The translations under genes were made by a program, and so were the position numbers. Shown here in pieces: positions 16,552 to 45,010 of a DNA stretch of 64,000 nucleotides; within the stretch, counting starts at the first letter, position 1, and every line of letters starts with the position of its first letter. The stretch covers positions 62,001-126,000 of the IMG/VR virus record IMGVR_UViG_3300025121_000011; one strand, written 5' to 3'. Under the pieces are notes generated by a model. It did no database searches and had not been told where the DNA came from. It was given only the letters and a program-made list of their open reading frames with translations.

Positions 16552-17058
16552 ATGATAAGAGAGAAGTATAATACGGACATCGATGCGGTTCTACGAAACG
16601 TCTTAGAAAAAGCATCCTCTAGTTTAAAAACCATTAATTCTATTGAGTTTACTGATACCTTAGTAGCATCTCATGATATTAAAAAGATTGCTTTTGACGT
16701 ATATCGTGTAGAAAACGATCCATATCATAGCTTATGGATGTTGGAAGATATAGATGGAAAGCCTCATTTAGTTAGAGCTGCGGATCCATCTTATTCATCT
16801 AACAAGCAGGGTGATTGGTCTGCGATTAGCGATTATGAACATAAAAATGTCACCCTAGCATATAAAGATATACCTATTGCTAGATTTTCTTCAGATGAAT
16901 ATTCATTTAAACCAGAAGATGTTGGAACTTTTAAAACAGCTTTATTAGAATTAGCTGGTGAAAATGGTAAGTTTATTAAAGATGTTTTGCTGGAGCAATC
17001 CAATGATAAACGTAATGCTCTGGTATCTACCTTCCCAGAGTTAAGCAAATTTATTTAA
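16552..17058 (+). CDS. putative virion head protein
   Basis: First gene after the late motif; IKKIA site. Confidence 0.55.
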   Translation: MIREKYNTDIDAVLRNVLEKASSSLKTINSIEFTDTLVASHDIKKIAFDVYRVENDPYHSLWMLEDIDGKPHLVRAADPSYSSNKQGDWSAISDYEHKNVTLAYKDIPIARFSSDEYSFKPEDVGTFKTALLELAGENGKFIKDVLLEQSNDKRNALVSTFPELSKFI

Positions 17059-17069
17059 GGAATATAGTA

Positions 17070-18650
17070 ATGAAAGATATACAAATTAAAGATATTAGAA
17101 GCATCTTAAGTCAGGCTAAGACTGCTATGGGACAAATTGAACATGGAAGAGAACTCCCTGTATCATATGTCTTAGATAGATTTATTCAGGCATCATACAA
17201 GCATCCTACGGATCAATTAATAGGTAATATGCGTGATGTTTTAATGAAACGCGCCAATAAGCAAAGTTTTTTTACCGAGCAAGAAATTACTGCATGTTAT
17301 GACAAAATGTATGGGATTTCTGGTGGACAGACAGCTTTTAGAGACGAACTTGGAGATCTATTATTAGTTGATCCGAAATTATCAAAAACAGCTTATTCTT
17401 CATCTTCTAGACGCGGGTCAGATGAGGGTCGAGAAATTAAGGCTGATACAAACGAAGACTTATCAAATGCATTTGCTTCAATTTTTGACCTCGGTAATAA
17501 TAACTCATTTGGTACGTACAATTTACGTGATAAGAAAGAAATAGAAATGTTAGTGGTTGCCAAATTAAATGCAATGGGAATGCAACCAAATGATGTTATT
17601 CTATCAGAATCTAATGAACACTTTGTTTTGGCCACAGCAGTATATAATACAAATAGCTTAAATAAGGTGGCTGTGCATATACCTGTTCAGATTTCTAACG
17701 GAAAAATTCCCGTTCCAACTCAGATGATTTCTGATGGAGCTATGACTGATTTAAATCGTGCCAATCTTTTGGTTCACCTGAAAATGAGTGAAAATCAGAT
17801 AAAAACTTCTAGTCGTCAAGCTTTTTCAGGACAACATGGTTCTAAAGATATAGTTGTCGATCGAGCAGTAACTCCAGCTGCACTTACAGATTTTACTGAT
17901 TTAGAAAATCAATTAGTGGTAGCAGCATCGAATTATACAAAAGAACAAGTTATGATGGCCTCTAGTATGCTTTCTGCGGAATTTAAGGCTGTTGGAGTTG
18001 TTAATCCTCAAATCAAAGTTGCATCATCAGATAATAAAATGATATTATTTAATATATCTATACCAACCATAGCTGGACGAAGCAACATACATGTTCCTGT
18101 AGAGTTTCATAATAAGAAACCGATTTTACCAAGTAGATTTATTACTAGTAATGATAAAAAAGAATCTATTTATGATTTTACAGTTAATAATATTAATAAT
18201 TTTATTAAAAACGCTTCCCACTTAGATTTAGGCGTTACTCAAGCAAGACAAACTGGTGAATTGAGCAAGATGTCTTATCATCAATTGGTAGACAGGATTA
18301 TTGAAGGTGTAGCAACAGAAGATTATAAGTTAGCAGAAGATGCTTTATCTTCTATTCAAGAGCGTTTTGGTGCAACACAACATAAAATAGCTTTGGATAA
18401 GTTTTCAGAACTTCTTAAGGTTTCTTCTACTAAGGGCTCTACCAGAGAGCAACTAGTTAAGGAAGCATTCAAGCGAGGAGATTTGATCACACGGCCCACG
18501 TCTGTTGAGCCTTATTGTCCAAAATTAGGTCTTCCACTAAGTAAAGTAGACTTTGATAAGCATGGGCGGCCATATCCTAAGTATAGAAATAAGACTGCTA
18601 ACAATGATGAAGAAACTTTAATTTCTTCGTCTAGAATTTTATTTACATAA
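17070..18650 (+). CDS. putative internal head protein with an internally duplicated domain
   Basis: VHIPVQISNGKIPVP and IHVPVEFHNKKPILP repeats; several KxA/S sites. Confidence 0.55.
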   Translation: MKDIQIKDIRSILSQAKTAMGQIEHGRELPVSYVLDRFIQASYKHPTDQLIGNMRDVLMKRANKQSFFTEQEITACYDKMYGISGGQTAFRDELGDLLLVDPKLSKTAYSSSSRRGSDEGREIKADTNEDLSNAFASIFDLGNNNSFGTYNLRDKKEIEMLVVAKLNAMGMQPNDVILSESNEHFVLATAVYNTNSLNKVAVHIPVQISNGKIPVPTQMISDGAMTDLNRANLLVHLKMSENQIKTSSRQAFSGQHGSKDIVVDRAVTPAALTDFTDLENQLVVAASNYTKEQVMMASSMLSAEFKAVGVVNPQIKVASSDNKMILFNISIPTIAGRSNIHVPVEFHNKKPILPSRFITSNDKKESIYDFTVNNINNFIKNASHLDLGVTQARQTGELSKMSYHQLVDRIIEGVATEDYKLAEDALSSIQERFGATQHKIALDKFSELLKVSSTKGSTREQLVKEAFKRGDLITRPTSVEPYCPKLGLPLSKVDFDKHGRPYPKYRNKTANNDEETLISSSRILFT

Positions 18651-18659
18651 GGAGATGAT

Positions 18660-19127
18660 ATGTCCAAAAAAATATCAAATATGCTGAAAGAGGCTCACAA
18701 GCTGAATCGGACTTTAGCCAGAGACTTTAGAAAAGCGGCTTTACATACATTAATAGAAATGTCTAAAGAAGCTGCTACAACTAATGAACAACACGGCGCT
18801 TTGCAAAATATGCAATCTGGAGTAACTAATTATCCAACCAGACAAGAATTTGCGCATCAACGAGGTGGAACTGGTAACGATCTTAAGTATGATACAGGTC
18901 CGGTTCATGAAAAGTCTAAAATAAGTTACGAAGAGGCTCCAAGAACTTTGTCAACCAGATACTCTCCAGATAGGGTGGGCCAACAGGCACATCTCAAAGA
19001 TGGTATTCAAACAGATCCTCTTACAGGGCGTGAATATAATTGGAATGAAGGTTTTACAACAGAAACTGGAGAAAAGTTTCCTGGTGGATCTGTCGATTTG
19101 CAAACCGATTTATACTTCGATTACTAA
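18660..19127 (+). CDS. putative virion protein
   Basis: AGGAG SD; LSTRYSPD..DPLTG..YNW. Confidence 0.55.
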   Translation: MSKKISNMLKEAHKLNRTLARDFRKAALHTLIEMSKEAATTNEQHGALQNMQSGVTNYPTRQEFAHQRGGTGNDLKYDTGPVHEKSKISYEEAPRTLSTRYSPDRVGQQAHLKDGIQTDPLTGREYNWNEGFTTETGEKFPGGSVDLQTDLYFDY

Positions 19128-19175
19128 GAATATATCCCGAGGTTAAGAGCTGGATATATACTGATAATAAATCCT

Positions 19176-19216
19176 AAATCCACTACTATATTTTGGTAAT
19201 ATAGCAGTGGATTTTT
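19176..19216 (+). terminator. rho-independent terminator
   Basis: AAATCCACTACTATATT-TTGGT-AATATAGCAGTGGATTT stem (1 mismatch) followed by Ts. Confidence 0.75.
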
Positions 19217-19228
19217 AAGTTTGGAGGA

Positions 19229-19939: not shown

Positions 19940-20180
19940 AAAGCTGAATTTATCAGATTTAATTAATCTTCATGCATTTGAAGCCTGGATAAGAAAATAT
20001 ATCAAATTTTATAATGAGAGGAAGATACCAGGCAAACATATGAATTTATTTTTATCTTATATTGAAGACTTAGTAAGAGGAACAGATTTTCCTCATGATC
20101 GTCAAGTTTGGTTTGAAACAATTAAACATTTACAGGATTCATTAATTCAAAATGAAAGATTTAAACAAAGACATTCATAG
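19908..20180 (+). CDS. hypothetical protein
   Basis: AGGAG SD; overlaps neighbouring genes. Confidence 0.55.
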   Translation: MMQTLAQTKIKKLNLSDLINLHAFEAWIRKYIKFYNERKIPGKHMNLFLSYIEDLVRGTDFPHDRQVWFETIKHLQDSLIQNERFKQRHS

Positions 20181-21618
20181 GATTCAAAAGAAGTATCCTG
20201 GGATTAAATTTGGCAGCCATGAGGATGCTAGAGATTTTGTGAATATTCATAATATCTTAGAAGCAGCCTTTGGTAGAGTAGATGCAGAAATTTTATCAGC
20301 TGCTTACTTAGAACGAAAAGAGCAAGACTTAAAAACTCCTAATGATTATTATTATTTAGTAACGAAAGCAATTTTAAAATTTAGTAACTTTAAAAAAGTA
20401 GCATATCCAATGGGAATGGGAACCTTATCTGAACCGTATTTAGTAAAATCTGATTTAGAGCAATGGGTCGGTTTAGTCCATAAGATATATCAAGCTGTTC
20501 AGTCAGGAAAGATGTCTTTTCATCAAGCACTAGATTATTATGCGAGTCTATTAGACAACAAAGATGATCAGCGCTTTAGATTCAAGAAATGGCTACTTTA
20601 CTATAAGAATGGAGAACATGAAAAGTATTCTGAGGAGGGAGCAGTAATTATGAAGAAACAATCTGATTTTCAATTTGGACTAAATTCTGTACCATATGAT
20701 AGATCTCCTGTTGTATTAGATGAGTCTGTTCAAAAGCAATTAAATGATTTAAAAGAATTTACTAAGAAAGAAGAAGATTTTGTCGCATGGAAGGCTCGGA
20801 TTAATGGAGCAATTAGACGCATAGACAAACTTCTTAGAGACGATCAGCATCTTAATCCCGAAGAACAGGCTGATTTAGCGGATATGCTGCATGCCTTTGA
20901 TCTTCAAATGCGTAGAGTGAGGCTGCAATCTATGGCTAGTGATATTGCATTTAGAACAGCAGGAAACTTTAAAAAGGTTGGATATTCCAAAGCATCAGAA
21001 ATTCTCACTGCTATCGCACAGGATCTTTCAGAACCCATTCCAGAGGCTCCGGTGGCGCCAGAATCCAGGCCCCCTGCGGCTATTCCTGGTGCTCCTGAAG
21101 GCGCTGGCCAGGGTGCAGAGTCTCCCGGAGCATCAGAGGCAATAGGGAGAGCCCTGGAGGCTGGCGAAGGTAATGAAAAAAGTCCGGGTATTTTGGTTGA
21201 GCCAAAAAAAACTCCCGGAATCAGAGGCGACTTAGCACAAGCTGCCACAAAATTAGAAGACGTGGCAGCGAGATTAGCAGATCGTAGAACGATTCGCCAA
21301 TTAGCAGAGTTTGATATAATATTAGATCAACTTGGATTGGCATCTTTATTCCCAGAGTTAATGGAAGCTCAAAGTAAGTTAATTGATGCATATTCTTATG
21401 CTATGGTTCGTGTCACAAAAATGTTGGGAATGTTATCTTCAGGTAGAAGCATGTCGGAAATTTCCGAAGCTAAGAAAACTGATATTTCTAATAAAGCAAT
21501 TAAAGAAGTAAATAAGACTATGTCTCAAGGTGAAGAACCTATTGATAACGGAAAAGGGCAGGGCGCCATTAATCAAGAGTTTTCTCAAGAAGTTACACCT
21601 CCTAAAAATATTGTATAA
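20152..21618 (+). CDS. putative internal head protein (carries the 20-aa tag; possible internal start at 20650)
   Basis: KKVA and KKQS sites; AFRTAGNFKKVGYSKASEIL motif; Pro/Ala/Gly linker. Confidence 0.55.
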   Translation: MKDLNKDIHRIQKKYPGIKFGSHEDARDFVNIHNILEAAFGRVDAEILSAAYLERKEQDLKTPNDYYYLVTKAILKFSNFKKVAYPMGMGTLSEPYLVKSDLEQWVGLVHKIYQAVQSGKMSFHQALDYYASLLDNKDDQRFRFKKWLLYYKNGEHEKYSEEGAVIMKKQSDFQFGLNSVPYDRSPVVLDESVQKQLNDLKEFTKKEEDFVAWKARINGAIRRIDKLLRDDQHLNPEEQADLADMLHAFDLQMRRVRLQSMASDIAFRTAGNFKKVGYSKASEILTAIAQDLSEPIPEAPVAPESRPPAAIPGAPEGAGQGAESPGASEAIGRALEAGEGNEKSPGILVEPKKTPGIRGDLAQAATKLEDVAARLADRRTIRQLAEFDIILDQLGLASLFPELMEAQSKLIDAYSYAMVRVTKMLGMLSSGRSMSEISEAKKTDISNKAIKEVNKTMSQGEEPIDNGKGQGAINQEFSQEVTPPKNIV

Positions 21619-21630
21619 GGAGTCTAAGTT

Positions 21631-23634: not shown

Positions 23635-24765
23635 ATGGAGAAACTTAGTTTTTCAGTAACCTCATATATGGAGCCAATCCCAAATAACGCGGGATTTGTA
23701 CATCCTCCAGTAGAGGAAAATTTAGCAGAGGACGATTCAATGGTTGTCGAGTTTGTAGAAGAGGTCTCTATGCCAAAAGGTTTACCTATGCCTATACAAC
23801 AAGATGTAGAGCCACTAGTTATTACATTTGAAGAAGACACGGATTTAGATGATTATGAAAAAATTCTGCATGAAGTTATGGGGTATAGTGAAGGTGAAGA
23901 TGATCATGAAGATGAAGACGTTGATGAGAAAGATGCTTCTGAAAGCGATGCTCAAGATGGGGTTCAATATAATCTATTAGACACACCTGATGAATTTACC
24001 AGTGAAGAAAACGCTTGGAGTGCATCGGGTTCTGAATCATCTGAATCAAAAGGAAGATATATTCCCGGAGCAGATAGTGTATATATAGACGATGAACCAG
24101 AAGAGCCAAAAGAAGAGCCAAAAATTACCAATTGGAATGATGATAGAGATGTATCTCACTTTACTGATTATCTAAGGGATAGTTTAAATAATTATCCTAA
24201 GCATGATGGACATTCTATTTCAGGTTGTGAAAGAACTTATGCTTATATTAGTCGTTTAAATAATGAAATTTCTGAAGCAGTACGAAAAGATGTGAATCAA
24301 GAGCTTGATACTGATTTTCTAGAAAAAGCCAGAGTTAAAATGATGCAGGATATGAGAACCTTAAAAGAGCATATGGGGAAATTAAAAAAGAAATTAAAAA
24401 GTTCTACTGGTGAAGATAACTCCGTGGAATCTGCTATAATTGCATTAGGCAGAAGTGCATCCAACGAAATAGAAAAAGAAGCAACAGTTGCAAGACAACA
24501 AATGGTTATTACTCCATTTGAGAGGGCGATATCTGGTATATTAATAAATGCGGTTATATCTGCTGGCCATCCATTTGAAGATGTATATGATTTTCTGAAA
24601 GAAAAGTATAAGTTAGATGAGAGAGAAGAACTTGCTCTTATGCAAATGGTTATGGATGCCGGTTTCCCAATTTTTAAAGATAGAGGATCAATAGGGGTGA
24701 GCCCAGAAAAGGGTAAAGAAACCGAAAGACATGGTGTTGATTTTATCAAAACTTATTTTGGATAA
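23635..24765 (+). CDS. acidic putative head/core protein
   Basis: AAGGAG SD; IEKEA site. Confidence 0.6.
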   Translation: MEKLSFSVTSYMEPIPNNAGFVHPPVEENLAEDDSMVVEFVEEVSMPKGLPMPIQQDVEPLVITFEEDTDLDDYEKILHEVMGYSEGEDDHEDEDVDEKDASESDAQDGVQYNLLDTPDEFTSEENAWSASGSESSESKGRYIPGADSVYIDDEPEEPKEEPKITNWNDDRDVSHFTDYLRDSLNNYPKHDGHSISGCERTYAYISRLNNEISEAVRKDVNQELDTDFLEKARVKMMQDMRTLKEHMGKLKKKLKSSTGEDNSVESAIIALGRSASNEIEKEATVARQQMVITPFERAISGILINAVISAGHPFEDVYDFLKEKYKLDEREELALMQMVMDAGFPIFKDRGSIGVSPEKGKETERHGVDFIKTYFG

Positions 24766-24774: not shown

Positions 24775-25353
24775 ATGAAGGTATCCAGACAAACAGATTT
24801 GCAAGAAACAAATAAAATTACATGTGATTGGCTGGATCAATTTGCTCGTGGGCTTGCCAAATCTGCAAATTTAGAATATTTAGATCCGGATAAAAAAGCA
24901 ACACTTGAAAATGCTTCTAAGTTTAGAACAATAGAAGCAAAGATGGAAGATATTAAAACTAGAATAGGTTTTGAAAAACTTATGTTTCATAATAAACAAG
25001 AAATAACTGCTACCTCCATAGAATTTAATAATGAAGTTAAAATTGCTAAAATTAAACATACTCCAGAAGATATAGCAGCTATGAAGCAAATTTTAGAGCA
25101 TATTGCAAAAATTATGGAACATGAGCCACATCTTGATGCAACTGCTATTATTAATCGATGTCGACAAGAAGATGGTTTGCGTTTTTTAGACCTCCCTATT
25201 GATGTTAATAAACTCCGTAGGGCAATTGATAAAAAATTATCAAAAGATGAAAGTGCTGAAATCGTAACTTACGTACCACCAGAACCAATTAATTCTGGTG
25301 AGGCAGAAGATACAAATGCAGATTATTATCGACATTCTGAGATCACAACCTAA
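24775..25353 (+). CDS. hypothetical virion protein
   Basis: AAGGAG SD; LAKSA and VKIA sites. Confidence 0.6.
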   Translation: MKVSRQTDLQETNKITCDWLDQFARGLAKSANLEYLDPDKKATLENASKFRTIEAKMEDIKTRIGFEKLMFHNKQEITATSIEFNNEVKIAKIKHTPEDIAAMKQILEHIAKIMEHEPHLDATAIINRCRQEDGLRFLDLPIDVNKLRRAIDKKLSKDESAEIVTYVPPEPINSGEAEDTNADYYRHSEITT

Positions 25354-33209: not shown

Positions 33210-35072
33210 ATGAAAAAAAATGCATGGCCAGGAGTTATAGGCACCCCAGAAGAATATGGCGATGGACTTGGGTTAACTCAAGATGGCCCAACAAAAATAG
33301 ATTTGCAAACTTCTGTTCCATCGGATGGTTTGACTCCTGAAAAATCTGTATTAGAGAATATGGATTCTGAGCAGGGTTTGTCTGAGACAACGGAATATGC
33401 TGGTGGAATAATTAGTCCGGTAGAAGGTAGTGATTATAATTGGGTTCTTGATGATGTGCGATATAAAAAGGCTCAGGTTACTATATATAAAGGTGCTAAT
33501 GCTCCTTTAGCATCTTTTCAATGTGGAATAGCAGAAAGTGTTCAAGACCAAGTAATCGGATTACAATCATATAAATCATTAGATGACTCCGCTGGTTTAT
33601 TATTTAAATATAGTCGGCCTCAAAGTGTATTATATCACATGGGAACGGTAACATTTCCAATAGATATTTTATTTGTAGATGATGAAAATATTATTAAAAA
33701 AGTTTATAGCAATATTCAGCCGGGATCTTTGGCTACTTTTGGATGTGCTGAAATAAAATATGTTTTAGAAATTCACGGAGGATTGTCATCTAGACTTGGA
33801 ATTGATACAGGTGATATGATTGATATAGAGACATTATCAAGTTTTTTAAAAGATGCAACTAAAATTGCACAAGAAGTTGGGTTTGTTAAGGCGGCTATTG
33901 TTACTAATTTTAAATTTCAAGACAATTCTAATATGAATTGGAAGGGATTTCCTATAATTAATATAAATACAGGTTTAATTAAAACAGCCTCAGAGAAATC
34001 TAAATTATCATCAACTGCTGAGTTTTTAAAAGTATCTCCGATAACTAATAAAGTTGTAACCGCTTTTTATATTGATGGCTTAATAAACGCAGCTCCAATG
34101 GTTAAATATTATAATAATTATAGTGAAGTAGATGATTCTTGGAATGGAACACTAGACATAGATATCTATGGTAGAACAATAACTGTAGGTAAAGGCAAGG
34201 AAAAAGACGCTCGGTTAGAATTGCCGTATGGAAAAGACACTATGGTTAGAAAGAGCTTTGCTTCTTTTATGTATATGGATTCAAATGATTATTATAATAA
34301 GGAAGTATTTAAATTTTTAGAAGATATTGTGGCTGCAACTAAAGTGAGTAATAAAATAATTATTTGCACCTCCATGAGAGAACCTAAACATTTGCTTAAA
34401 ATGTTACAGCATAAAATATATTATAGTCTCGGTGAAATTATTAATTTAGAAGCATCTCAGATTTTGCAAATTTCTGAAGAAATGGATGCACAAAATATTT
34501 TAGAATGCATCTCTGAGAGATATCCAGAGGCTAAAATAGAAATTAGAGCAGATAACTCTATTTTAAAGCGGGCTGGTGTGCCTGTATCAGATGATATAAA
34601 AAAGAAAGCTAAAGAAATTTTAAAGATGCTAGATCGAGCAATAGAGTTGATAGAAGATTCTTTAGATAAAATGTTGCAAAATAAGATGGAATATGAAAAA
34701 CATCAAGATAATGCTGAAGTAATAGAAAAATCTAAGGGGCAATTTCATCAGTCTGCAAAAAGAAACATAAGAATCATTAAGGCATATTTAATTAAAATCA
34801 GAGATGCTATTAGAATTTTTAATGATATTAAAGATGCAACGACTACTTTAGAAATTATTGATGGTTTAGTATCATCTTCTAAATCTGCATCTGATGCAGC
34901 AGAAAAGATCTTTGCTTTACGAGATAAAGTTGGTTCTCCTGATTTTTTTATGGAGTTTTCTGCACATACAGATGGATATGAGCGTACAATAGAAGACTTA
35001 GTCTCTTCTGTGGAGCGTGCCAAAGAATATATAAATACAAATATTTTGGGTATGATTGTTTTATCAGAGTAA
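33210..35072 (+). CDS. multidomain protein with a DUF192-like domain and C-terminal coiled coil
   Basis: GLQ..SL..AGLLF..HM..VTFPIDILFVD..YVLEI.GG; domains bounded by KKA, KTA and KRA. Confidence 0.65.
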   Translation: MKKNAWPGVIGTPEEYGDGLGLTQDGPTKIDLQTSVPSDGLTPEKSVLENMDSEQGLSETTEYAGGIISPVEGSDYNWVLDDVRYKKAQVTIYKGANAPLASFQCGIAESVQDQVIGLQSYKSLDDSAGLLFKYSRPQSVLYHMGTVTFPIDILFVDDENIIKKVYSNIQPGSLATFGCAEIKYVLEIHGGLSSRLGIDTGDMIDIETLSSFLKDATKIAQEVGFVKAAIVTNFKFQDNSNMNWKGFPIININTGLIKTASEKSKLSSTAEFLKVSPITNKVVTAFYIDGLINAAPMVKYYNNYSEVDDSWNGTLDIDIYGRTITVGKGKEKDARLELPYGKDTMVRKSFASFMYMDSNDYYNKEVFKFLEDIVAATKVSNKIIICTSMREPKHLLKMLQHKIYYSLGEIINLEASQILQISEEMDAQNILECISERYPEAKIEIRADNSILKRAGVPVSDDIKKKAKEILKMLDRAIELIEDSLDKMLQNKMEYEKHQDNAEVIEKSKGQFHQSAKRNIRIIKAYLIKIRDAIRIFNDIKDATTTLEIIDGLVSSSKSASDAAEKIFALRDKVGSPDFFMEFSAHTDGYERTIEDLVSSVERAKEYINTNILGMIVLSE

Positions 35073-35134: not shown

Positions 35135-38100
35135 ATGTCTACTTCAGGATTTATTAAAATTGGTTATTCTAGCGGTAATGTGGTTAAAGAAGTTTCTTCT
35201 GATATTGTTGCTGCCTCTCCACATATTTTGGCTAGACTAGAAAAACTCGCTAATACCTCTAAAGTATTGGCTCCTAAATCAGATGATTTTTTATATTTTA
35301 CAATTATATTTTTAAAAGCAGCGGAATCCGCTCTTGTTGATGATGATGGAAATTTAAAAAAAGTCGGTCACGAGCGTGCTTGGGGATATTTTGATGATAA
35401 ATATCATTGGCATGGAAATGTTCCAGCGCACAAAAATAATAATGGTGATATATTTCCTGAATCTGAATTAAAGAAGGCAGCTAGAGATTGGATTGGAACA
35501 CCATTATGTGTAGACCACAAATCAGAATCTGTTGATGGTATTCGTGGAATTATTTTAGATACTTATTATGATGAAAAGCACAAACAGGTTGTTGGTCTTT
35601 GTGCTTTGGATAAAGTGAATTATCCAAATTTAGCTCGAAAAGTTCAAACGGGTGTAGTGCGGTATGGCTCCATGGGAACTGCTGTAACTACTTCTATTTG
35701 CAGCGATTGTGGGAATAGAGCTACCACTCCTAAAGAGTATTGTGTCTGTGTTACAGCACGTTCAGCATATGGAGAAGTTAATATTGGTCTAAAGCCAATG
35801 GAATATAGTTTAGTAGTTCAGCCTGCCGAACCGGGTGCGCGATTGCTTCGATGTATTGCTTCTATAGGAGAACATAAGGCTGAATTAAGTAATTATGGAG
35901 TTTCTGATTTTGAAAAGTTTAGTGCTCAATTATCCTTGGGACAAGCAGAAGAATTAGACCAAATTTTAAAAGTTGCTTGTGGTCCACGTGGTTGTTCAGT
36001 AACTCAGCGCCAATCTATAGTAAATAATTATTTGCATAAGTATAATCTTGTTAAAACAGCAGAAGAAGGCGGATTAAGGTGGAGTGAAAATAGAGAGGTG
36101 CAGTTTGCTAAAGCGTTATCTCAATTGAGAGATGCAGGGGCTTCTGATTCTGATATTTCAGATTTATATGAAAGTTTTGGCAAATCCTATGATGATTCTC
36201 TTGAGAATAATATGTCTGTTGGTCAAGGAGAAACCTTTAGTAGCGGACAAGATGCTTCTGGAAGGGCAGCTATAGAAACTGTTGATAATGAAGGGGTTAG
36301 AGGAACTGGTGGAGAGTCTACCGGATTAGTTGCTAGTGATAATGGTGAGAATATTGATACATTTCAAACGGGAGGCGTAGGTCCTGAAACTTATGCTTTT
36401 TCTAGTTTAGATAAAAATAAAACGCATAAAAACATTATGGAGGAAATAATGAATGATTCTAAGTTAAACAAACGAGCGGAATTACGTCGTCGGATTGCAT
36501 ATTACTATGGTGGAGCCGCAGGAGATGGTAAGGCTGAACCTGTAGAGCCAAGTACTTTTACTTCAGAAGATTACAAGAAATATTGGATGGACGACAAACA
36601 CATGCATCAAGATAAGGCAATGGGCGGTCAAGATGGTATGTTTCCTGGTGACGAACAAGTTAAGGAACAACAGAAGCGCGCTCAGTTGGCCCAACGTCGA
36701 TTGGAGAGAAAAGCTTACTTTTATGGTGGAGCCGCAGGAGATGGTAAGGCTGAACCCGTAGAGCCAAGCACTTTTACTTCAGAAGATTACAAGAAATATT
36801 GGATGGATGATAAGCATATGCACCAGGATAAAGCTATGGGTGGACAAGATGGTATGTTTCCTGGTGACGAACAAGTTAAGGAACAACAGAAGCGCGCTAG
36901 ATTAAGTACAAAATTTAAGCAAGTTCGAGCACTAAATGGTGCGATCAACAAACAGGCTTCATGTTTTGAAGTTTATGCTGATGATAAATTAATTTTAGCA
37001 ACAACTGCTAAAGATATTTATGGTCCAAAACTAGAAGAGAATTGGAAGTTTTTAACCAGCAAAGAGTATGGCAAGGCTGTTGTTGCAGCTATTCGTACTG
37101 ATGGTTTACGTTCTGTGGCTGGAAAGCTTACTAGATTAGGTCAAGCAGATCCGATGGCTGGATTAGGTGCTCCTCCTGCTGCTCCCGGTGCTTTGGATGC
37201 TCCAATGCCGGAAGAGGCTCCCCTACCAGAAGAATCTATAATGCCAGAAGAAGATCCAGAAGCTGGTGCTGAGGATATTGACGAAGAAGATCCTCAAGCT
37301 AAAGCATCAGATGCTTTAGTGGTAGTAGAGGAAGCTTTTGCTGATCTAAAAGAAGCAATTGAAGACTTGGGCAGTGGAAAAGGTGGAGTAGAAGTAAATA
37401 TTGATACAGATGCCGACAAACCAGTAGATGAAATTACCAATCTATCTCGTAACCTTTTAAAAGATATGAAGATTGTTTTGGCAGAATCTAGTGAATCAGC
37501 TGACGAATTAGCTTTAATTATTGAAGCTTATGATCACAAAAATAGGATTTCTCCTAAAAAGTACTCAGAGCTTAAATCACTAACTGCTAGTGCATTGGAA
37601 GATTCAGCACAATTAACCAGCGAAGCACGTACCCTGCTAAAGATGGCAAAGATTGTTTCTTCGGCTATGGTAAAAACTTCTGAATATGTAGAAGAAGCAG
37701 AAGATAGTGCAAAAGAACGAGAGGAAGTAGCTACTAAAGAGCCCTCAGGAAAAGATACTTCAAAGGCAGCCTCAAAGGCAGAGTCTGAGTTGTTTGCTCA
37801 GGCGCTTAATTTACGTAAACAACGTAGATTAGCTTTGTTAGAATCTGCTCGTAAAAAAATTGCTATGGAAGCTTTAGATTCAGACGAAGTAGAAAATGAA
37901 TCTCCAGATTTAAATGAAGCAGATGATGGTGCTGGTCATGCGCAACGCGTAGCAGAATCAACTCCAAAAGGTGATTCTGATAAAGCAGGTGCTCCGGCCG
38001 TTCCAGTAGGTACCCCTCAAGAGGTGGCTAATAAAGCTCCAACAGGTAATCTGGCTGATGACGGAAAATTCAACTTAGCTGACGATAAAGAAAATGAAAT

Positions 38101-38590
38101 GGAAGATATTGCAGAAGAAGAAGCTGAAGAAGAAGTTGAAGAGCACGAAGAAGATATGCATGGTGGGAAAGATGAAAATGATGCAAATGACGTAGTCCCA
38201 AATGATGGCGTTCAGGGTGCGTCTTTTGTAGTTGAAAAACTTCCATCACCACGCGCTGCAATAGCTAAAAAGTTGATTGAAAGAAAAGCGGCAGAAGAGA
38301 AGGAGGCCGTTAAACTTCGGATGAGAAGAGCTTATGACTTAGCAATGGATATGCAACGCAAGGGTTTGATTGCTCCAACTAGAGCATCATTAGATAGCCA
38401 AGTAGATTTGGTTTTAGAATTTGATGACAAAGCCTTTGAAGCATTTAAACGATCTATAGCTAATGCGAGAATGCCTGAGACTATTAAGGTTGCTAGTGAT
38501 CTTGGCGGATTAAACATAGGTTATGAAACACCTGAGGATGCACCACAAAGATCAATGGTAGAAAATCTTTCTGCATTATTCAACAAATAA
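35135..38590 (+). CDS. prohead protease/scaffold polyprotein
   Basis: N-terminal NNNGDIF..G.PLCVDH..RGIILD..SMG..CSDCG..EYSLV..PA; acidic coiled-coil C-terminus; lies between portal and capsid genes. Confidence 0.75.
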   Translation: MSTSGFIKIGYSSGNVVKEVSSDIVAASPHILARLEKLANTSKVLAPKSDDFLYFTIIFLKAAESALVDDDGNLKKVGHERAWGYFDDKYHWHGNVPAHKNNNGDIFPESELKKAARDWIGTPLCVDHKSESVDGIRGIILDTYYDEKHKQVVGLCALDKVNYPNLARKVQTGVVRYGSMGTAVTTSICSDCGNRATTPKEYCVCVTARSAYGEVNIGLKPMEYSLVVQPAEPGARLLRCIASIGEHKAELSNYGVSDFEKFSAQLSLGQAEELDQILKVACGPRGCSVTQRQSIVNNYLHKYNLVKTAEEGGLRWSENREVQFAKALSQLRDAGASDSDISDLYESFGKSYDDSLENNMSVGQGETFSSGQDASGRAAIETVDNEGVRGTGGESTGLVASDNGENIDTFQTGGVGPETYAFSSLDKNKTHKNIMEEIMNDSKLNKRAELRRRIAYYYGGAAGDGKAEPVEPSTFTSEDYKKYWMDDKHMHQDKAMGGQDGMFPGDEQVKEQQKRAQLAQRRLERKAYFYGGAAGDGKAEPVEPSTFTSEDYKKYWMDDKHMHQDKAMGGQDGMFPGDEQVKEQQKRARLSTKFKQVRALNGAINKQASCFEVYADDKLILATTAKDIYGPKLEENWKFLTSKEYGKAVVAAIRTDGLRSVAGKLTRLGQADPMAGLGAPPAAPGALDAPMPEEAPLPEESIMPEEDPEAGAEDIDEEDPQAKASDALVVVEEAFADLKEAIEDLGSGKGGVEVNIDTDADKPVDEITNLSRNLLKDMKIVLAESSESADELALIIEAYDHKNRISPKKYSELKSLTASALEDSAQLTSEARTLLKMAKIVSSAMVKTSEYVEEAEDSAKEREEVATKEPSGKDTSKAASKAESELFAQALNLRKQRRLALLESARKKIAMEALDSDEVENESPDLNEADDGAGHAQRVAESTPKGDSDKAGAPAVPVGTPQEVANKAPTGNLADDGKFNLADDKENEMEDIAEEEAEEEVEEHEEDMHGGKDENDANDVVPNDGVQGASFVVEKLPSPRAAIAKKLIERKAAEEKEAVKLRMRRAYDLAMDMQRKGLIAPTRASLDSQVDLVLEFDDKAFEAFKRSIANARMPETIKVASDLGGLNIGYETPEDAPQRSMVENLSALFNK
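36500..36898 (+). repeat. two direct repeats (period 216 nt) encoding near-identical 61-aa peptides
   Basis: Y(Y/F)YGGAAGDGKAEPVEP...GMFPGDEQVKEQQKRA at 36500-36682 and 36716-36898. Confidence 0.97.
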
Positions 38591-38605: not shown

Positions 38606-39205
38606 ATGATTGGAAATAGATTTAATGGCGATAATATCGCCGCAGAGTTTCAGAGGATTCTTCAGAAACATAATCTGGAAAAAAAGGCTCAAGCTCTTTT
38701 TGATTCTTCTGCCGAAGATGATCCTATAGAGAATATATTGAATTCAGGAGAGGATGAAGAGTTTGATGATTCCTTATCTGATCCAGAGTCTTTTTTGATG
38801 GCTGATGAATTACATGCAGATAATATTAGTGGGGCTCTAGATGGAAACATCAAAGCATTAGATGGTATATCTGAATCTTGCCCTATTTGTGGTAAAAGAG
38901 TATGTAATTGTTCAGATAATAAAGCTGTTTCTGCAAATGAATATTTTGATACCACAGCTAATCATATTTTGACTGGACTTGGAAAGATTGCTGGAAGCTT
39001 AAAGTTAAAAGGTCATAACTTTGCTGCGGATATTGTGGAGGCTACCGCCATGGGTATAAAAGATGATTTTATAAAAGAAGCATCTGCAAAAATGGCTGTC
39101 GCCGTAGAACTTAAAAAAATGGCTAAAGATTTATCTAAATCAGGAAATCAAATGGCTGCTGATATGGTTCTTGCTACAATTGATAATATCAAGAAAACCT
39201 CTTAA
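38606..39205 (+). CDS. putative head protein with two copies of the 20-aa tag
   Basis: LGKIAGSLKLKGHNFAADIV and LKKMAKDLSKSGNQMAADMV; LEKKA site; CPICG..CNC. Confidence 0.6.
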   Translation: MIGNRFNGDNIAAEFQRILQKHNLEKKAQALFDSSAEDDPIENILNSGEDEEFDDSLSDPESFLMADELHADNISGALDGNIKALDGISESCPICGKRVCNCSDNKAVSANEYFDTTANHILTGLGKIAGSLKLKGHNFAADIVEATAMGIKDDFIKEASAKMAVAVELKKMAKDLSKSGNQMAADMVLATIDNIKKTS

Positions 39206-43298: not shown

Positions 43299-43319
43299 AA
43301 ATAAGTAGGAGAACAACTT

Positions 43320-43982
43320 ATGTTAAAACCACTACAGCCAGGAATTGAACCCCTAGGCCAATTTGATATCGAAGACGACAACGTCTCCTTAATTGTGGGC
43401 GGTGAAGTTGCGGTACTTCAGGCTCTTAACGTAGCAACAGACTTGTATGCTGCGGATGTTTTTGGTGACCCAGGTCCCCAGATTCATTTGATCTTAGGAC
43501 GCGTAGCAACTCATAGCGTTTTCTATGGATTAGTTGATGAAGGTAGCTCTGTCGGCGGTGACGGATCCGCAAGTTATGGCACCATGTTTGGTACTGTAAT
43601 TGGAGCAACTGTCGGTAAAGGAACTGGATTTGGTACCTCTTCAACCTCAGGTGTTGTTGTTATTGGACCAAGCACCATGGTCGGTTCAGGTAAGGCCACT
43701 TTGTGGACCAAACCAGGACTTTATGGTATCACTTCTGATGCATGGACTTCTTCTGCCGAATATGCTGCCGCAACCCTTAATGCACCAATTTATGGTGATG
43801 CTGCCGATGGTACTAATGATGGTAAATTAACTACCACAGGTGGTGGCAATGGTATTGCTGTCGCTTTACATATCGGTCGTGTTGATGATATTTCTCTAGT
43901 TTCAACTACGAATACCATGGCCGGCGAAACCTCAACCTCACAGTATGGTGCATTGTACCTTGCTGGCGTCCAAATTGCATAA
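43320..43982 (+). CDS. capsid decoration/cement-like protein
   Basis: Immediately upstream of the capsid gene; YGLVDE..STMVGSGKAT..G.Y..D..DGKLTT. Confidence 0.6.
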   Translation: MLKPLQPGIEPLGQFDIEDDNVSLIVGGEVAVLQALNVATDLYAADVFGDPGPQIHLILGRVATHSVFYGLVDEGSSVGGDGSASYGTMFGTVIGATVGKGTGFGTSSTSGVVVIGPSTMVGSGKATLWTKPGLYGITSDAWTSSAEYAAATLNAPIYGDAADGTNDGKLTTTGGGNGIAVALHIGRVDDISLVSTTNTMAGETSTSQYGALYLAGVQIA

Positions 43983-43996
43983 TAAGGAGTTAAATT

Positions 43997-45010
43997 ATGT
44001 TTAATACACAAGGCGAATTAAGCGCAAAAAACGTAAAAGATGCTTTGGCCCAGATCGTAAGGTATGCGTCAATTATTGAAGAGTTAGCACCTTCTAGTTC
44101 AGCTCTATCTCAAGGTTCCTCACTAAATGAAGAGCAGAGAGATGAGATGATCAAGCAAGCTCTAATGACTCAAGAAGGCAAAATTGCTTTAGGTCAGGCT
44201 ATGGCCAACCCAATCCGAAGAAACCTTGACTATCAGGGTGTAGGACGAAAGGCTCTCGTAGTCGATCCCCTCCCACAAGGTGCTTTGCCAATATATGACC
44301 GCGATATTGATGTTGGTGCAGTTGTTATTTCTAGTAACGGTACCGCTCCAGAATCACGCGTTTTTGGTGACAGAGTAACTATTCCTGAGTTTGAAGTGGT
44401 TTCTAACCCAACTGTCCGTATTGCTGAAGTCAAGCGTCGGAGATTTAATGTTATCGATCGTGCCCAGCAAAAGGCTCGTCAGGAAATTCAAGCCCAGGAA
44501 GACAAGAACGTATTTGCTGCTCTTGATTTCGCAACTGATAGTGCTAAAGGTGGAGAGAATGCCTACCAGCGTTTAGATAATACTACAACTGCTGATGAAC
44601 TTTCAAAGCAGGGCCTTTTGGCTCTAAAGCGTCAAGTTGATCGGTGGGACCTGGTAACTTCTAAATATTTTATGCATATCAACGAATTTACCGATATGCT
44701 CAATTGGGAATCTGCTGGTGCTGCTGGTGCTTCACAGGTAGATCCTGTTACTCAGCGTGAATTGCTACAAACTGGCCTTTATGGCTCAATCTTCGGTGCC
44801 GACATCATCGTCTCTAAGGTTGTTGAGAACCGTCAGGTTTTCGCAGTTGCAGATCCTGAGTTCGTAGGTGTTATGCCTATTCGCCAGGACATAGAAGTAT
44901 TACCCGCTGACGAACCTAAACAATTGAAGTTAGGCTGGGTGGTGAGTGAAATAATAGGTATAGGTATCGTCAATCCTCGTGGCGCTGCAAGTGGTTATGT
45001 GACTGATTAA
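43997..45010 (+). CDS. major capsid protein (HK97 fold)
   Basis: ALGQAMANPIR, P.FEV.SNP.V, IQAQED, G.IFGADI..S; strong SD, optimised codons, strong downstream terminator. Confidence 0.85.
   Translation: MFNTQGELSAKNVKDALAQIVRYASIIEELAPSSSALSQGSSLNEEQRDEMIKQALMTQEGKIALGQAMANPIRRNLDYQGVGRKALVVDPLPQGALPIYDRDIDVGAVVISSNGTAPESRVFGDRVTIPEFEVVSNPTVRIAEVKRRRFNVIDRAQQKARQEIQAQEDKNVFAALDFATDSAKGGENAYQRLDNTTTADELSKQGLLALKRQVDRWDLVTSKYFMHINEFTDMLNWESAGAAGASQVDPVTQRELLQTGLYGSIFGADIIVSKVVENRQVFAVADPEFVGVMPIRQDIEVLPADEPKQLKLGWVVSEIIGIGIVNPRGAASGYVTD

What the first reader, a model, noticed from the sequence alone, without database searches (positions are those of the whole stretch)
16552..44100. Frequent h-x-K/R-x-A/S sites in head-module proteins: putative prohead protease cleavage code
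Seen: IKKIA (16552); LSKTA, IKVAS, FIKNA, NKTA (17070); FRKAA (18660); FKKVA, MKKQS (20152); IEKEA (23635); FRKTA (portal); MKKIA (32139); MIKTS, LIKYA (32380); MKKES (32913); MKKNA, YKKA, LIKTA, ILKRA (33210); LVKTA, LNKRA, RRIA, ERKA, MVKTS, TIKVA (35135); LEKKA, FIKEA (38606); ITKQA (40251); LTKKA, MRKMA (40641); IVRYA (capsid N-terminus). Many lie at the extreme N-terminus or at domain junctions. Known: T4 gp21 and phiKZ-like prohead proteases cut many head proteins at short motifs ending in Glu. Inference: a different, Ala/Ser-P1 specificity converts these polyproteins into mature units.
Basis: partly seen in the sequence, partly recalled or inferred. Interest (0 to 1): 0.75.

Follow-up and report, generated by a model that had tools for sequence, protein, structure and literature searches.

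The report
Candidate prohead-protease cleavage motif, jumbo phage
The head proteins of this 335-kb jumbo phage and its relatives, including phage G, carry a conserved short motif (hydrophobic-x-Lys-x-Ala) that is most likely the cutting signal of the phage's own capsid-maturation protease, a specificity not described in the literature I could search.

Summary
In the 23 proteins of 16552-44100, [LIVMFYW]-x-[KR]-x-[AS] occurs 94 times against 52 expected (z about 6). The core h-x-K-x-A occurs 47 times against 18 (z about 7). The rest of the 335-kb genome shows no excess (0.97x), five reordered control motifs are flat, and block shuffles give the same result. An unbiased residue-pair scan recovers K+2A as the top signal.

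The motif is conserved in relatives despite divergent flanks. It is enriched about 3x in phage G head genes and in 130 diverse protease homologues. It flanks, but avoids, the catalytic core of the 35135 protein, whose model matches herpesvirus protease and T4 gp21 (Z about 10). It sits in N-terminal propeptide-like positions of the capsid protein, portal and most small head proteins. It is absent or depleted in terminase, the tRNA nucleotidyltransferase and the decoration-position protein.

Published N-terminal sequencing of the phage G capsid protein places its cut after an Ala, but in a context (RVALA|Q) that does not fit the full motif.

Best reading: a prohead-protease cleavage code, probably Ala at P1, Lys at P3 and a hydrophobic residue at P5. 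No cleavage has been measured.

The parts
35135..38590 (+). 1151-aa fusion protein. It has an N-terminal propeptide (aa 1-39), an assemblin/T4 gp21-fold protease core (aa ~50-243, nt 35282-35863), a helical tail to aa 309, then an acidic, low-complexity, scaffold-like region (aa 310-1151) holding a 72-aa tandem duplication.
   Evidence: PHROG 18299 head maturation protease, E 5e-13. 33% identity to phage G gp19. AF2 model pLDDT 82.5. VZV protease Z 10.4 and T4 gp21 Z 10.1. H128, S130 and S179 invariant in 67 diverse homologues. Sequence and repeat.
35237..35251 (+). LEKLA (aa 35-39): predicted N-terminal autoprocessing site of the protease.
   Evidence: Kept in 23/23 close relatives. In 67 distant homologues the hydrophobic position is 67/67, K 60/67 and A 61/67. 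Aligns with LVKTA at aa 41 of phage G gp19.
36047..36061 (+). LVKTA (aa 305-309): predicted site that releases the protease domain from the scaffold-like region.
   Evidence: Kept in 87% of relatives with flank identity 0.18. Alignment conservation stops at the Ala/Ser. It follows the last helix (289-302), and model pLDDT is below 50 from aa 309.
35963..35977 (+). ILKVA (aa 277-281): secondary site in the helical tail of the protease domain.
   Evidence: Kept in 70% of relatives.
36464..36478 (+). LNKRA (aa 444-448): site immediately before the first copy of the 72-aa repeat.
   Evidence: Kept in 91% of relatives. Repeat context.
36701..36715 (+). LERKA (aa 523-527): site immediately before the second repeat copy.
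   Evidence: Kept in 70% of relatives. Sequence context.
37634..37648 (+). LLKMA (aa 834-838): site in the acidic scaffold-like region.
   Evidence: Kept in 74% of relatives with flank identity 0.27.
38606..39205 (+). 199-aa protein directly after the protease gene, a candidate scaffold or core protein. It has four conserved sites: LEKKA aa 24 (nt 38675-38689), LGKIA aa 125 (38978-38992), FIKEA aa 155 (39068-39082) and LKKMA aa 169 (39110-39124).
   Evidence: Sites kept in 76-100% of 21 relatives with flank identity 0.21-0.44 and variable x positions. The family carries 6.4x the expected strict motif count. 95% of homologues have a site ending within the first 45 aa.
43997..45010 (+). Major capsid protein (337 aa, HK97 fold). 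Candidate sites are IVRYA aa 20-24 (nt 44054-44068) and MIKQA aa 51-55 (nt 44147-44161). The residue aligned with the experimentally mapped phage G cut is G66|Q67.
   Evidence: 50% identity to phage G gp27, PDB 6WKK. IV[KR]YA kept in 59/59 relatives and MIKQA in 51/59, with a variable linker at aa 32-46 between them. Phage G mature N-terminus is Q28.
28249..32109 (+). Portal protein carrying intein-like insertion(s). FRKTA aa 63-67 (nt 28435-28449) lies in a variable N-terminal region before the conserved YSPLFQ core.
   Evidence: PHROG portal match and phage G gp14 homology. All 15 portal homologues have at least one site before YSPLFQ. The N-terminal region has 38 sites against 10.3 expected, and the rest of the portal 23 against 28.8.
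33210..35072 (+). 620-aa head-module protein with a DUF192 domain (aa 104-206). Conserved site ILKRA at aa 451 (nt 34560-34574).
   Evidence: Pfam match. Site kept in 89% of relatives with flank identity 0.36. Family at 3.9x the expected strict motif count.
17070..18650 (+). 526-aa candidate internal head protein. Conserved sites are LMKRA aa 58 (nt 17241-17255), LLKVS aa 448 (18411-18425) and LVKEA aa 462 (18453-18467).
   Evidence: Conservation. Family at 4.0x expected. 86% of homologues have a site ending within 45 aa of the N-terminus.
18660..19127 (+). 155-aa protein starting MSKKISNMLKEA, resembling the N-terminus of phage G gp20 (MSKKISRLKKTA). Predicted short N-terminal propeptide ending at aa 12 (nt 18681-18695).
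   Evidence: Sequences. All 9 homologues have a site within the first 45 aa against 0.17 expected. Family at 8.4x expected.
20152..21618 (+). 488-aa protein. FKKVA aa 80 (nt 20389-20403) is conserved.
   Evidence: Kept in 90% of relatives with flank identity 0.26. Family at 2.9x expected.
23635..24765 (+). 376-aa protein. IEKEA aa 279 (nt 24469-24483) is conserved.
   Evidence: Kept in 13/13 relatives with flank identity 0.22. Family at 3.8x expected.
24775..25353 (+). 192-aa protein. LAKSA aa 27 (nt 24853-24867) is a predicted N-terminal propeptide site.
   Evidence: Kept in 85% of relatives. 92% of homologues have a site within the first 45 aa.
32380..32913 (+). 177-aa protein. LIKYA aa 100 (nt 32677-32691) is conserved.
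   Evidence: Kept in 10/10 relatives. Family at 4.0x expected.
43320..43982 (+). 220-aa protein in the position of a capsid decoration protein. This is a predicted non-substrate in which the motif is depleted.
   Evidence: It occupies the position of phage G gp26, but no sequence match was found. In 62 homologues the strict motif occurs once against 10.8 expected, and the broad motif 10 times against 29.8.
25366..28239 (+). Large terminase with an intein. This is a predicted non-substrate lying inside the stated interval.
   Evidence: Pfam GpA_ATPase, Intein_splicing and LAGLIDADG_2. Strict motif at 0.38x expected in 15 homologues.

Best explanation
The motif [LIVMF]-x-K(>R)-x-A(>S) is the recognition and cleavage signal of the phage's own capsid-maturation protease. 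That protease is the N-terminal assemblin/T4 gp21-fold domain of the 1151-aa protein encoded at 35135-38590.

Inferred mechanism. The protease is co-assembled into the procapsid as a fusion with a long, acidic, scaffold-like region. Once activated it does four things.

1. It frees itself by cutting at LEKLA (aa 39) and LVKTA (aa 309).
2. It chops its own scaffold-like tail (7 motif sites downstream of aa 309 in this protein; a median of about 10 per whole protein in homologues) and the 199-aa protein encoded at 38606 into fragments that can leave the shell.
3. It removes short N-terminal propeptides of about 10-65 residues from the capsid protein, the portal and most small head-module proteins. 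This is analogous to the capsid-targeting propeptides of the T4 internal proteins.
4. It leaves intact the proteins that lack the motif: its own catalytic core, the decoration-position protein, the 39314 protein, and terminase.

The cut is most likely immediately after the Ala, giving Ala at P1, Lys at P3 and a hydrophobic residue at P5. This resembles herpesvirus assemblin, which also cuts after Ala.

What is shown: the enrichment, its localisation, its conservation, the protease fold and the site topology. What is inferred: that the motif is cleaved, by this enzyme, at this bond.
For: 1. Statistics. The core motif is at 3.0x (z about 7-8) in window head proteins only. This is robust to block shuffles and to reordered controls.

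2. Conservation. 14 of 49 motif sites lying in flanks below 50% identity are kept in at least 70% of relatives. For six control patterns pooled the figure is 7 of 142. The x positions vary freely.

3. Independent replication. Phage G head genes gp4-gp21 have 22 strict sites against 7.8 expected (z 5.0). Homologues below 70% identity in IMG/VR head families give 3.24x, against 0.61x for non-head families. The 130 protease fusions, each from a different 50%-identity cluster, have 1320 sites against 434 expected, or 3.2x after local-composition correction, with a median of 10 sites per protein.

4. Enzyme. PHROG head maturation protease match. The AF2 model (pLDDT 82.5) matches VZV protease at Z 10.4 and T4 gp21 at Z 10.1. 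His128 and Ser179 are invariant.

5. Topology. Sites are nearly absent from the catalytic core (about 0.05 per 25 aa). There is about one per protein just N-terminal of the core, and sites are frequent after it. At aa 305-309 alignment conservation stops at the Ala/Ser, and the model becomes disordered (pLDDT below 50) from aa 309.

6. Substrate pattern. N-terminal sites occur in 55-100% of homologues of the capsid protein, the 38606, 18660, 24775, 17070 and 40251 proteins, and all 15 portals, against about 0.2 expected. The motif is absent or depleted in terminase, the tRNA nucleotidyltransferase, and the 43320 and 39314 proteins.

7. External experiment. The mature phage G capsid protein is 255 of 282 residues by N-terminal sequencing (PMC5646251 Table 1). 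That means a cut after Ala27, so Ala is at P1.

8. Information content of the motif falls to background after the residue following Ala, as expected for P-side recognition.

9. Precedent. Herpesvirus pUL26 is a protease-scaffold fusion that cuts itself at YLQA|T and VQA|S (PMC4498786).
Against: No proteomic or biochemical cleavage data exist for this phage.

The only mapped site in a relative is phage G gp27, EGRVALA|QAM. It has Arg at P5 and Ala at P3, so it is not an h-x-K-x-A site. The aligned window residue at P1 would be Gly66. The motif therefore cannot be the complete rule, or the two proteases differ.

Many individual window sites are not conserved: 43 of 64 alignable sites fall below 70%.

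Some conserved sites lie in well-conserved helices and could be structural. Examples are FLKAA at aa 59 of the protease and VGRKA at aa 82 of the capsid protein.

Ser at P1 is not enriched in the 130 protease homologues.

The catalytic assignment of His128 and Ser179 was not checked by residue-level superposition.

The phage G mass-spectrometry paper (Gonzalez 2020, J Mol Biol) was not available, so I could not compare with any sites it may list.
Confidence: 0.62

Rival explanations
1. The motif is a real, selected short linear motif but is not cleaved. It would be a docking or capsid-targeting signal that recruits proteins to the scaffold, portal or protease inside the procapsid, with the actual cuts made elsewhere, as at the RVALA|Q-type site mapped in phage G.
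For: The mapped phage G capsid-protein cut is not at an h-x-K-x-A site. N-terminal placement in many small proteins would also suit a targeting tag. The protease's N-side site lies in a predicted helix (aa 29-45), not an extended loop.
Against: About ten copies per protease fusion, spread through low-complexity linkers, is odd for a targeting tag and natural for degradation sites. Sites sit exactly at fold and disorder boundaries. The motif is avoided in the catalytic core and in shell-associated proteins that must persist, which suggests that carrying it is destructive. The motif ends in Ala, the P1 residue found experimentally in phage G.
Confidence: 0.15
2. The motif is the protease's cleavage signal, but the scissile bond follows the Lys. 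That would give Lys at P1, hydrophobic at P3 and Ala at P2', as in the HK97 capsid protein, which is cut after Lys103 (recalled knowledge).
For: Lys is the most constrained position after Ala. HK97-type proteases can cut after Lys (recalled, not checked here).
Against: The experimental phage G cut follows Ala, not a basic residue. At aa 305-309 conservation extends through the Ala/Ser and then stops. Arg substitutes only partly for Lys. Known assemblin-fold enzymes read P-side residues ending at P1 (herpes x-x-A|; phiKZ S/A/G-x-E| per PMC13282480; T4 L/I-x-E| recalled, cf. the LPE motif).
Confidence: 0.12
3. The excess is a by-product of composition or shared ancestry: Lys/Ala/Leu-rich helices, coiled-coil scaffolding segments or paralogous domains, with no motif-specific function.
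For: The head proteins are Lys- and Ala-rich. The protease fusion contains an internal duplication. Some conserved sites are inside conserved helices.
Against: Whole-protein and 20-50-aa block shuffles both give z of 6-7. Local-composition expectation still gives 3.2x. Reordered motifs with the same composition are mostly flat at 0.8-1.25x; one (h-[KR]-x-x-[AS]) reaches 1.38x in the relatives' head families. No paralogy was found among head proteins at E<0.01. Motif positions are kept while the x positions and flanks diverge.
Confidence: 0.04

Closest known systems
Herpesvirus assemblin-scaffold fusion (pUL26; R-site and M-site cleavage after Ala)
   Same: The protease fold is the same (VZV protease Z 10.4, pseudorabies pUL26N Z 9.6). 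The architecture is the same: an N-terminal protease fused to a C-terminal scaffold that is released by self-cleavage (PMC4498786). In both, the recognised sequence ends in Ala.
   Different: Here the conserved positions are hydrophobic at P5 and Lys at P3. The herpes-type [VLI]-x-A-S is not enriched in the window's head proteins and only weakly (1.39x) in the protease homologues. There are about 10 sites per fusion, and sites occur in many other head proteins, instead of two or three. The host is a bacterium. Sequence identity is only 10-13%.
T4 gp21, phiKZ gp175 and SPN3US gp245 prohead proteases with Glu-ending motifs
   Same: The fold matches (T4 gp21 5JBL, Z 10.1, 19% identity over 132 residues). 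The biology is the same: one head protease trims the capsid protein, the portal, internal proteins, scaffold and itself at a short motif, including short N-terminal propeptides (PMC10052503, PMC13282480).
   Different: Their P1 residue is Glu (S/A/G-x-E for phiKZ, L/I-x-E for T4). [SAG]-x-E is not enriched in this head module and [LI]-x-E only marginally. Here the last fixed residue is Ala, with Lys two positions before. There is no Pfam or PDB sequence-level match.
Phage G (Donellivirus) gp19 protease and gp27 capsid-protein processing
   Same: This is the closest cultured relative, with capsid protein 50% and protease 33% identical. Its head genes carry the same enriched motif, often 5-20 residues from the N-terminus, and the protease is flanked by LVKTA, LEKVA and LLKIA. 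The mature capsid protein begins after an Ala.
   Different: The phage G protease is a stand-alone 300-aa protein, not a 1151-aa fusion. Its capsid protein lacks the first ~39 residues of the window's protein, including IV[KR]YA. The mapped cut (RVALA|Q) is not a motif site.
Protease-scaffold fusions of smaller phages (P2 gpO, lambda gpC/Nu3; HK97 gp4 as the related stand-alone protease), from recalled knowledge
   Same: A head protease is delivered into the procapsid by a scaffold-like C-terminal part and removed by autoproteolysis.
   Different: Those proteins are much shorter, and no h-x-K-x-A code is known for them. I did not test them here.

Membership tests
Capsid-maturation serine proteases of the herpesvirus assemblin / T4 gp21 fold | Assemblin-type beta-barrel fold | tested here: met
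   The AF2 model of aa 1-320 has pLDDT 82.5 and its core is above 90. The top PDB matches are all herpesvirus proteases and T4 gp21: Foldseek probability up to 1.00 and VIA-align Z 10.4 and 10.1 over aa 40/51-243. They rank above the first unrelated matches (MCE-domain proteins, Z about 6.6), with the top five above the tool's Z<8 caution line.
Capsid-maturation serine proteases of the herpesvirus assemblin / T4 gp21 fold | Catalytic His and Ser in the order His...Ser | tested here: inconclusive
   H128, S130 and S179 are invariant in 67 homologues that share 33-63% identity with the query, and their spacing is plausible. They were not mapped onto the catalytic residues of 5JBL or the herpes structures at residue level.
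Capsid-maturation serine proteases of the herpesvirus assemblin / T4 gp21 fold | Sequence membership in a curated protease family | tested here: inconclusive
   There is no Pfam hit for the query or its 21 relatives and no PDB sequence hit with a profile. PHROG 18299 'head maturation protease' matches aa 113-208 at E 5e-13.
Capsid-maturation serine proteases of the herpesvirus assemblin / T4 gp21 fold | Gene located in the head module between portal and major capsid protein | tested here: met
   Portal at 28249, protease at 35135, capsid protein at 43997, all on the + strand. Phage G has the same order: gp14, gp19, gp27.
Capsid-maturation serine proteases of the herpesvirus assemblin / T4 gp21 fold | Proteolytic activity on head proteins and on itself | not testable with these tools
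   Support is indirect only: the site topology and phage G capsid-protein processing.
Glu-P1 cleavage code of T4-like and phiKZ-like phages | L/I-x-E or S/A/G-x-E enriched in, and bounding, head proteins | tested here: not met
   [LI]-x-E is at 1.27x in head proteins against 1.10x in the rest of the genome. [SAG]-x-E is at 1.00x. Both are about 1.06x in the 130 protease fusions.
Herpesvirus assemblin substrate consensus (V/L/I)-x-A|S | Ala at P1 | tested here: inconclusive
   The motif ends in Ala (3.0-3.4x), and the phage G capsid protein is cut after Ala27. The scissile bond of the motif itself has not been measured.
Herpesvirus assemblin substrate consensus (V/L/I)-x-A|S | Hydrophobic P3 and Ser at P1' | tested here: not met
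   [VLI]-x-A-S is at 0.82x and [VLI]-x-A at 0.94x in head proteins. P3 here is Lys. Ser at P1' is only a mild preference, 17% or 1.9x.

The most novel reading that the evidence does not exclude
A very large, mostly uncultured clade of jumbo phages uses a previously undescribed maturation code, hydrophobic-x-Lys-x-Ala|. The clade comprises 1837 protease clusters at 50% identity, 304 capsid-protein loci in IMG/VR, and cultured phage G. The code is read by an assemblin-fold protease fused to a roughly 850-residue sacrificial scaffold. It is strong enough to predict, from sequence alone, which proteins enter the procapsid, where they are trimmed, and which must avoid the motif. Mechanistically this would be closer to herpesvirus Ala-P1 processing than to the Glu-P1 rule of T4 and phiKZ.
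Probability: 0.55. Interest if true: 0.7.

Novelty: new variant of a known kind. Interest (0 to 1): 0.6.

Why it matters
Prohead-protease specificity is known experimentally for only a few phage groups: T4, phiKZ/SPN3US, and HK97 in part. A 2026 review of jumbo phages mentions only the phiKZ S/A/G-x-E motif (PMC13282480).

A sequence-readable code for the phage G-like and marine jumbo clade would have three uses.

1. It would let virion and ejected-protein repertoires and mature protein boundaries be predicted for thousands of uncultured genomes.
2. It would give an evolutionary link between phage and herpesvirus Ala-P1 assemblins, in both cases as a protease-scaffold fusion.
3. It would define the protease signature that host immune 'tripwires' would have to mimic. 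CBASS CD-NTases are reported to be activated by prohead-protease cleavage of motif-bearing loops (PMC12991175).

The prediction can be tested directly by re-searching existing phage G virion mass-spectrometry data.

Tried and rejected
- First AF2 model, built from a 22-sequence alignment: pLDDT 56.7, unusable. It was replaced after a deeper search.
I removed that row and did not resend it.
- Pfam scans and a profile search of PDB sequences found no protease family. Only PHROGs and fold comparison identified the domain.
- Complex prediction of the protease (aa 40-310) with capsid-protein aa 1-70 gave a score of 0.01 and no verdict. This is not evidence either way.
- Gonzalez et al. 2020, the phage G mass-spectrometry and cryo-EM paper, is not held in the library. 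The phage G multi-omics paper used fully tryptic searches and reports no cleavage sites. Literature searches for a Lys/Ala prohead motif found nothing relevant.
- Virus Rctr197k (capsid protein 35% identical). Its protease-fusion homologue carries 13 sites, 8 of them of the h-x-R-x-A form, but its capsid-protein N-terminus does not keep the IVKYA site. This is too distant to be informative.
- I considered unifying the phage G cut with the motif by placing the scissile bond two residues after the Ala (K-x-A-x-x|). I rejected this because the implied P1 position shows no residue preference.
- BLAST of the window's head proteins against phage G found homologues only for the portal, the protease, a short gp21 segment and the capsid protein. 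The other substrate families could therefore not be aligned to phage G.

Full report
**Context.** The window is bases 62001-126000 of a single 335,169-bp contig with about 33% G+C. It is a jumbo phage. The protein encoded at 43997-45010 is an HK97-fold major capsid protein, 50% identical to gp27 of Bacillus/Lysinibacillus phage G, whose structure is PDB 6WKK. IMG/VR holds 304 loci encoding capsid-protein relatives; the 80 retrieved are 76-100% identical, and some lie on contigs of up to 332 kb.

The stated interval, 16552-44100, contains:
- a set of unannotated proteins (16552-25353), plus a tRNA nucleotidyltransferase at 21631;
- a large terminase with an intein (25366);
- a portal with LAGLIDADG/intein-like insertions (28249);
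- several small proteins;
- a 620-aa protein with a DUF192 domain (33210);
- a 1151-aa protein whose residues 97-208 match PHROG 18299, 'head maturation protease' (35135);
- further unannotated proteins;
- the capsid gene itself, which starts at 43997 but ends at 45010, beyond the stated interval.

I called 396 genes on the whole genome. I then compared the 23 proteins of the interval with the other 373.
- [LIVMFYW]-x-[KR]-x-[AS] occurs 94 times against 51.7 expected from per-protein shuffles (z 5.9).
- h-x-K-x-A occurs 47 times against 17.7 (z 7.2).
- The rest of the genome gives a ratio of 0.97.
- Five control motifs with the same residue classes in other orders or spacings are not enriched in either set.
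- Shuffling only within 20-, 30- or 50-residue blocks, which preserves local composition, leaves z at 5.8-7.3, and 0 of 500 shuffles reach the observed count.
- A sliding scan over all genes finds z>3 only at genome 76-110 kb, which is window 14-48 kb.
It is not among the top 20 pairs elsewhere.
- The position two residues before the Lys is enriched for L, F and M.

A dissection of the motif narrows the enriched class.
- [LIVMF]-x-K-x-A is at 3.0x.
- Arg in place of Lys is at about 1.6x.
- Ser in place of Ala is at 1.8x here but 1.0x in distant protease homologues.
- Gly or Thr in place of Ala, and Tyr, Trp or Thr at the hydrophobic position, are not enriched.

The three that begin at the initiator Met are not conserved.

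**Is it selected?** I collected relatives with 10-kb flanks around the capsid and portal genes. Their accessory head proteins are only 30-45% identical to the window's. Among motif sites whose flanks are below 50% identical, 14 of 49 are retained as a motif in at least 70% of relatives. For six control patterns pooled the figure is 7 of 142.

Retained sites keep the hydrophobic, Lys and Ala positions while the two x positions change freely. Examples:
- LEKKA / VVKTA / LVKSA / IIKES / MVKEA at aa 24 of the 38606 protein;
- LVKTA / FTKVA / LLKTS / FIKNA at aa 305 of the protease protein.

Counting motifs in homologues below 70% identity gives 3.24x for head families and 0.61x for the families downstream of the capsid gene. 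The split between families is sharp.
- Enriched: 38606 at 6.4x, 18660 at 8.4x, 35135 at 4.6x, and 17070, 32380, 33210, 32913 and 23635 at about 4x.
- Not enriched or depleted: terminase at 0.38x, the tRNA nucleotidyltransferase at 1.4x, 19229 at 0.37x, 39314 with 0 against 3.2 expected, and the protein in the decoration position (43320) with 1 against 10.8 expected.

There is no detectable paralogy among the head proteins, so the occurrences arose independently.

**Replication in distant relatives.**
- Phage G head genes gp4-gp21 carry 22 strict motifs against 7.8 expected (z 5.0). A 50-kb metabolic region of phage G gives 1.46x.
- The phage G sites are often 5-20 residues from the N-terminus: gp10 MKKSRLKKVS, gp13 MKRLISKTA, gp20 MSKKISRLKKTA, and portal MAKQA at aa 16. 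They also flank the protease gp19 (LVKTA at 41, LEKVA at 246, LLKIA at 272).
- A profile search of 1.84 billion representative proteins found 1837 relatives of the protease at E<0.001, mostly 1100-1300-residue fusions.
- In 130 full-length representatives the strict motif occurs 1320 times against 434 expected. This is 3.2x against a local-composition expectation, with a median of 10 per protein.

**The enzyme and the topology of sites.** With a 67-sequence alignment, residues 1-320 of the 35135 protein fold with pLDDT 82.5 and a core above 90. The best PDB matches are herpesvirus proteases and T4 gp21, at Z 10.4 for VZV and 10.1 for 5JBL over residues about 40-243. H128, S130 and S179 are invariant. 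I infer His128 and Ser179 to be catalytic but did not verify this by superposition.

I anchored 101 homologues on the conserved DFLYF strand.
- The catalytic core has about 0.05 sites per 25 residues, which is below chance.
- The 25 residues before the core carry 1.2 sites per protein.
- The remaining roughly 850 residues carry 0.15-0.55 sites per 25 residues.
- At the N-side site the hydrophobic residue is present in 67/67 sequences, Lys in 60/67 and Ala in 61/67. It aligns with phage G gp19 LVKTA.

At aa 305-309 the alignment is conserved up to the Ala/Ser and then becomes gapped and variable. The model is disordered (pLDDT below 50) from residue 309. The C-terminal two thirds of the protein is acidic and low-complexity. 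It contains a 72-aa tandem duplication, and each copy begins right after a motif: LNKRA|, LERKA|.

**Other predicted substrates.**
- *Capsid protein.* Residues 2-30 are conserved and contain an invariant IV[KR]YA (59/59). A variable linker follows (aa 32-46), then MIKQA (51/59) at the start of the conserved core.
- *Portal.* All 15 homologues have at least one motif in the variable region of about 85 residues before the conserved YSPLFQ core. That region has 38 sites against 10.3 expected, and the rest of the protein 23 against 28.8.
- *Small head proteins.* A site ending within the first 45 residues occurs in 54-100% of homologues of 17070, 18660, 20152, 22379, 23635, 24775, 32913, 38606 and 40251. 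About 0.2 is expected, and non-head families show 0-0.3.

**External experimental evidence.** Hua et al. 2017 (PMC5646251, Table 1) report that the phage G capsid protein is 282 residues and 31.2 kDa, and that the mature protein is 255 residues and 28.2 kDa by N-terminal sequencing. Only a cut after Ala27 (EGRVALA|QAMANPIR) reproduces these numbers. The protease lineage therefore does cut after Ala, unlike T4 and phiKZ.

That site has Arg at P5 and Ala at P3, so it does not match h-x-K-x-A. The aligned window sequence is EGKIALG|QAMANP, with Gly at the corresponding position. The motif is thus not the whole rule, or the capsid protein is processed in steps, with upstream motif sites at 24 and 55 and a final trimming site. 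The literature I could search contains no description of this motif.

**Mechanism proposed.** This is inferred. An assemblin-fold serine protease is built into the procapsid as a fusion with a long sacrificial scaffold. On activation it cuts after the Ala of [LIVMF]-x-K-x-A. It releases itself, fragments its tail and the 38606 protein, and removes N-terminal propeptides from the capsid protein, the portal and the internal proteins. Proteins that must stay intact lack or avoid the motif.

The assignment of Ala to P1 rests on four points:
- the phage G datum;
- the conservation boundary at aa 309;
- the decay of information content right after the Ala, with a mild preference for Ser, Gln or Tyr and avoidance of Pro, Ile and Asp at the next position;
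- analogy with herpesvirus pUL26, a protease-scaffold fusion that cuts itself at YLQA|T and VQA|S (PMC4498786).

A cut after the Lys, or a non-cleaved docking role for the motif, cannot be excluded without proteomics.

**Comparison and novelty.** It works like the T4/phiKZ/SPN3US systems, in which one protease processes many head substrates at a short motif. It resembles herpesvirus assemblin in fold, in the fusion architecture and in a motif ending in Ala. The code itself differs from both. Glu-ending motifs are at most marginally enriched, and herpes-type [VLI]-x-A-S is not enriched in the head proteins and only weakly in the protease homologues.

I rate it a new variant of a known kind: a new specificity and a very large sacrificial fusion in a widespread, mostly uncultured jumbo-phage clade. 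My confidence is about 0.6 that the motif is the cleavage signal with Ala at P1, and above 0.9 that it is a selected, head-specific short linear motif. Interest is 0.6. A phage-assembly specialist would want the proteomic test, which can be run on existing phage G data, but a lineage-specific prohead-protease motif is not in itself surprising.

Noticed in passing
window 36506-36898: A 216-bp (72-aa) tandem duplication, 1.8 copies at 93% match, lies inside the protease fusion gene. Each copy begins directly after a motif site (LNKRA|, LERKA|).
   Followed up: partly
window 5116-9333, 25366-28239 and 28249-32109: Three essential genes carry intein or homing-endonuclease insertions. DNA polymerase III alpha has Hint/Intein_splicing. 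The large terminase has Intein_splicing plus LAGLIDADG_2. The portal has LAGLIDADG_3, and its homology to phage G gp14 is split into three pieces, which suggests more than one insertion. One relative's protease homologue also carries Hint/LAGLIDADG domains.
   Followed up: partly
window 43320-43982 and 39314-40009: The motif is depleted in the protein at the decoration position: 1 against 10.8 expected for the strict motif and 10 against 29.8 for the broad one, in 62 homologues. In the 231-aa 39314 family it is 0 against 3.2. This may be selection against cleavage in proteins that must persist. The counts are not corrected for phylogeny.
   Followed up: partly
window 12373-16505: Just upstream of the head module lie a GroEL-type chaperonin (Cpn60_TCP1, E 3e-54), a RecA, a DnaG-type primase and a small protein with a sigma-70 region 4. 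None of them shows motif enrichment.
   Followed up: partly
window 21631-22386: A tRNA nucleotidyltransferase (CCA-adding type, PolyA_pol head domain) sits among the candidate internal head protein genes. It does not carry the motif excess (1.4x strict, 1.0x broad).
   Followed up: no
window 33210-35072 (aa 104-206): A DUF192 (COG1430) domain lies inside a 620-aa head-module protein that is rich in motif sites. Its role in a virion protein is unknown.
   Followed up: no
window 35135-35900 (protease aa 125, 189, 192, 203): Four Cys residues (C125, C189, C192, C203) are invariant across 67 diverse protease homologues and include a CxxC. They may form a metal-binding insertion in the assemblin fold.
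   Followed up: no
window 41122-41251: A 24-bp tandem repeat, 5.4 copies at 93% match, lies inside the 885-aa gene at 40641-43298 and encodes a proline-rich, PKVEPPV-like repeat.
   Followed up: no
L110 (KX853510 Virus Rctr197k) 10749-13745: In a distant relative (capsid protein 35% identical), 8 of the 13 sites in the 999-aa protease-fusion homologue have Arg in place of Lys (LVRIA, LKRVA, LMRSA, MSRAA and others). I suspect this reflects a higher G+C content, which I did not measure.
   Followed up: partly
window 47167-48480: An adenylosuccinate lyase gene (Lyase_1 plus ADSL_C) lies just downstream of the capsid gene. It is an auxiliary metabolic gene within the structural region.
   Followed up: no
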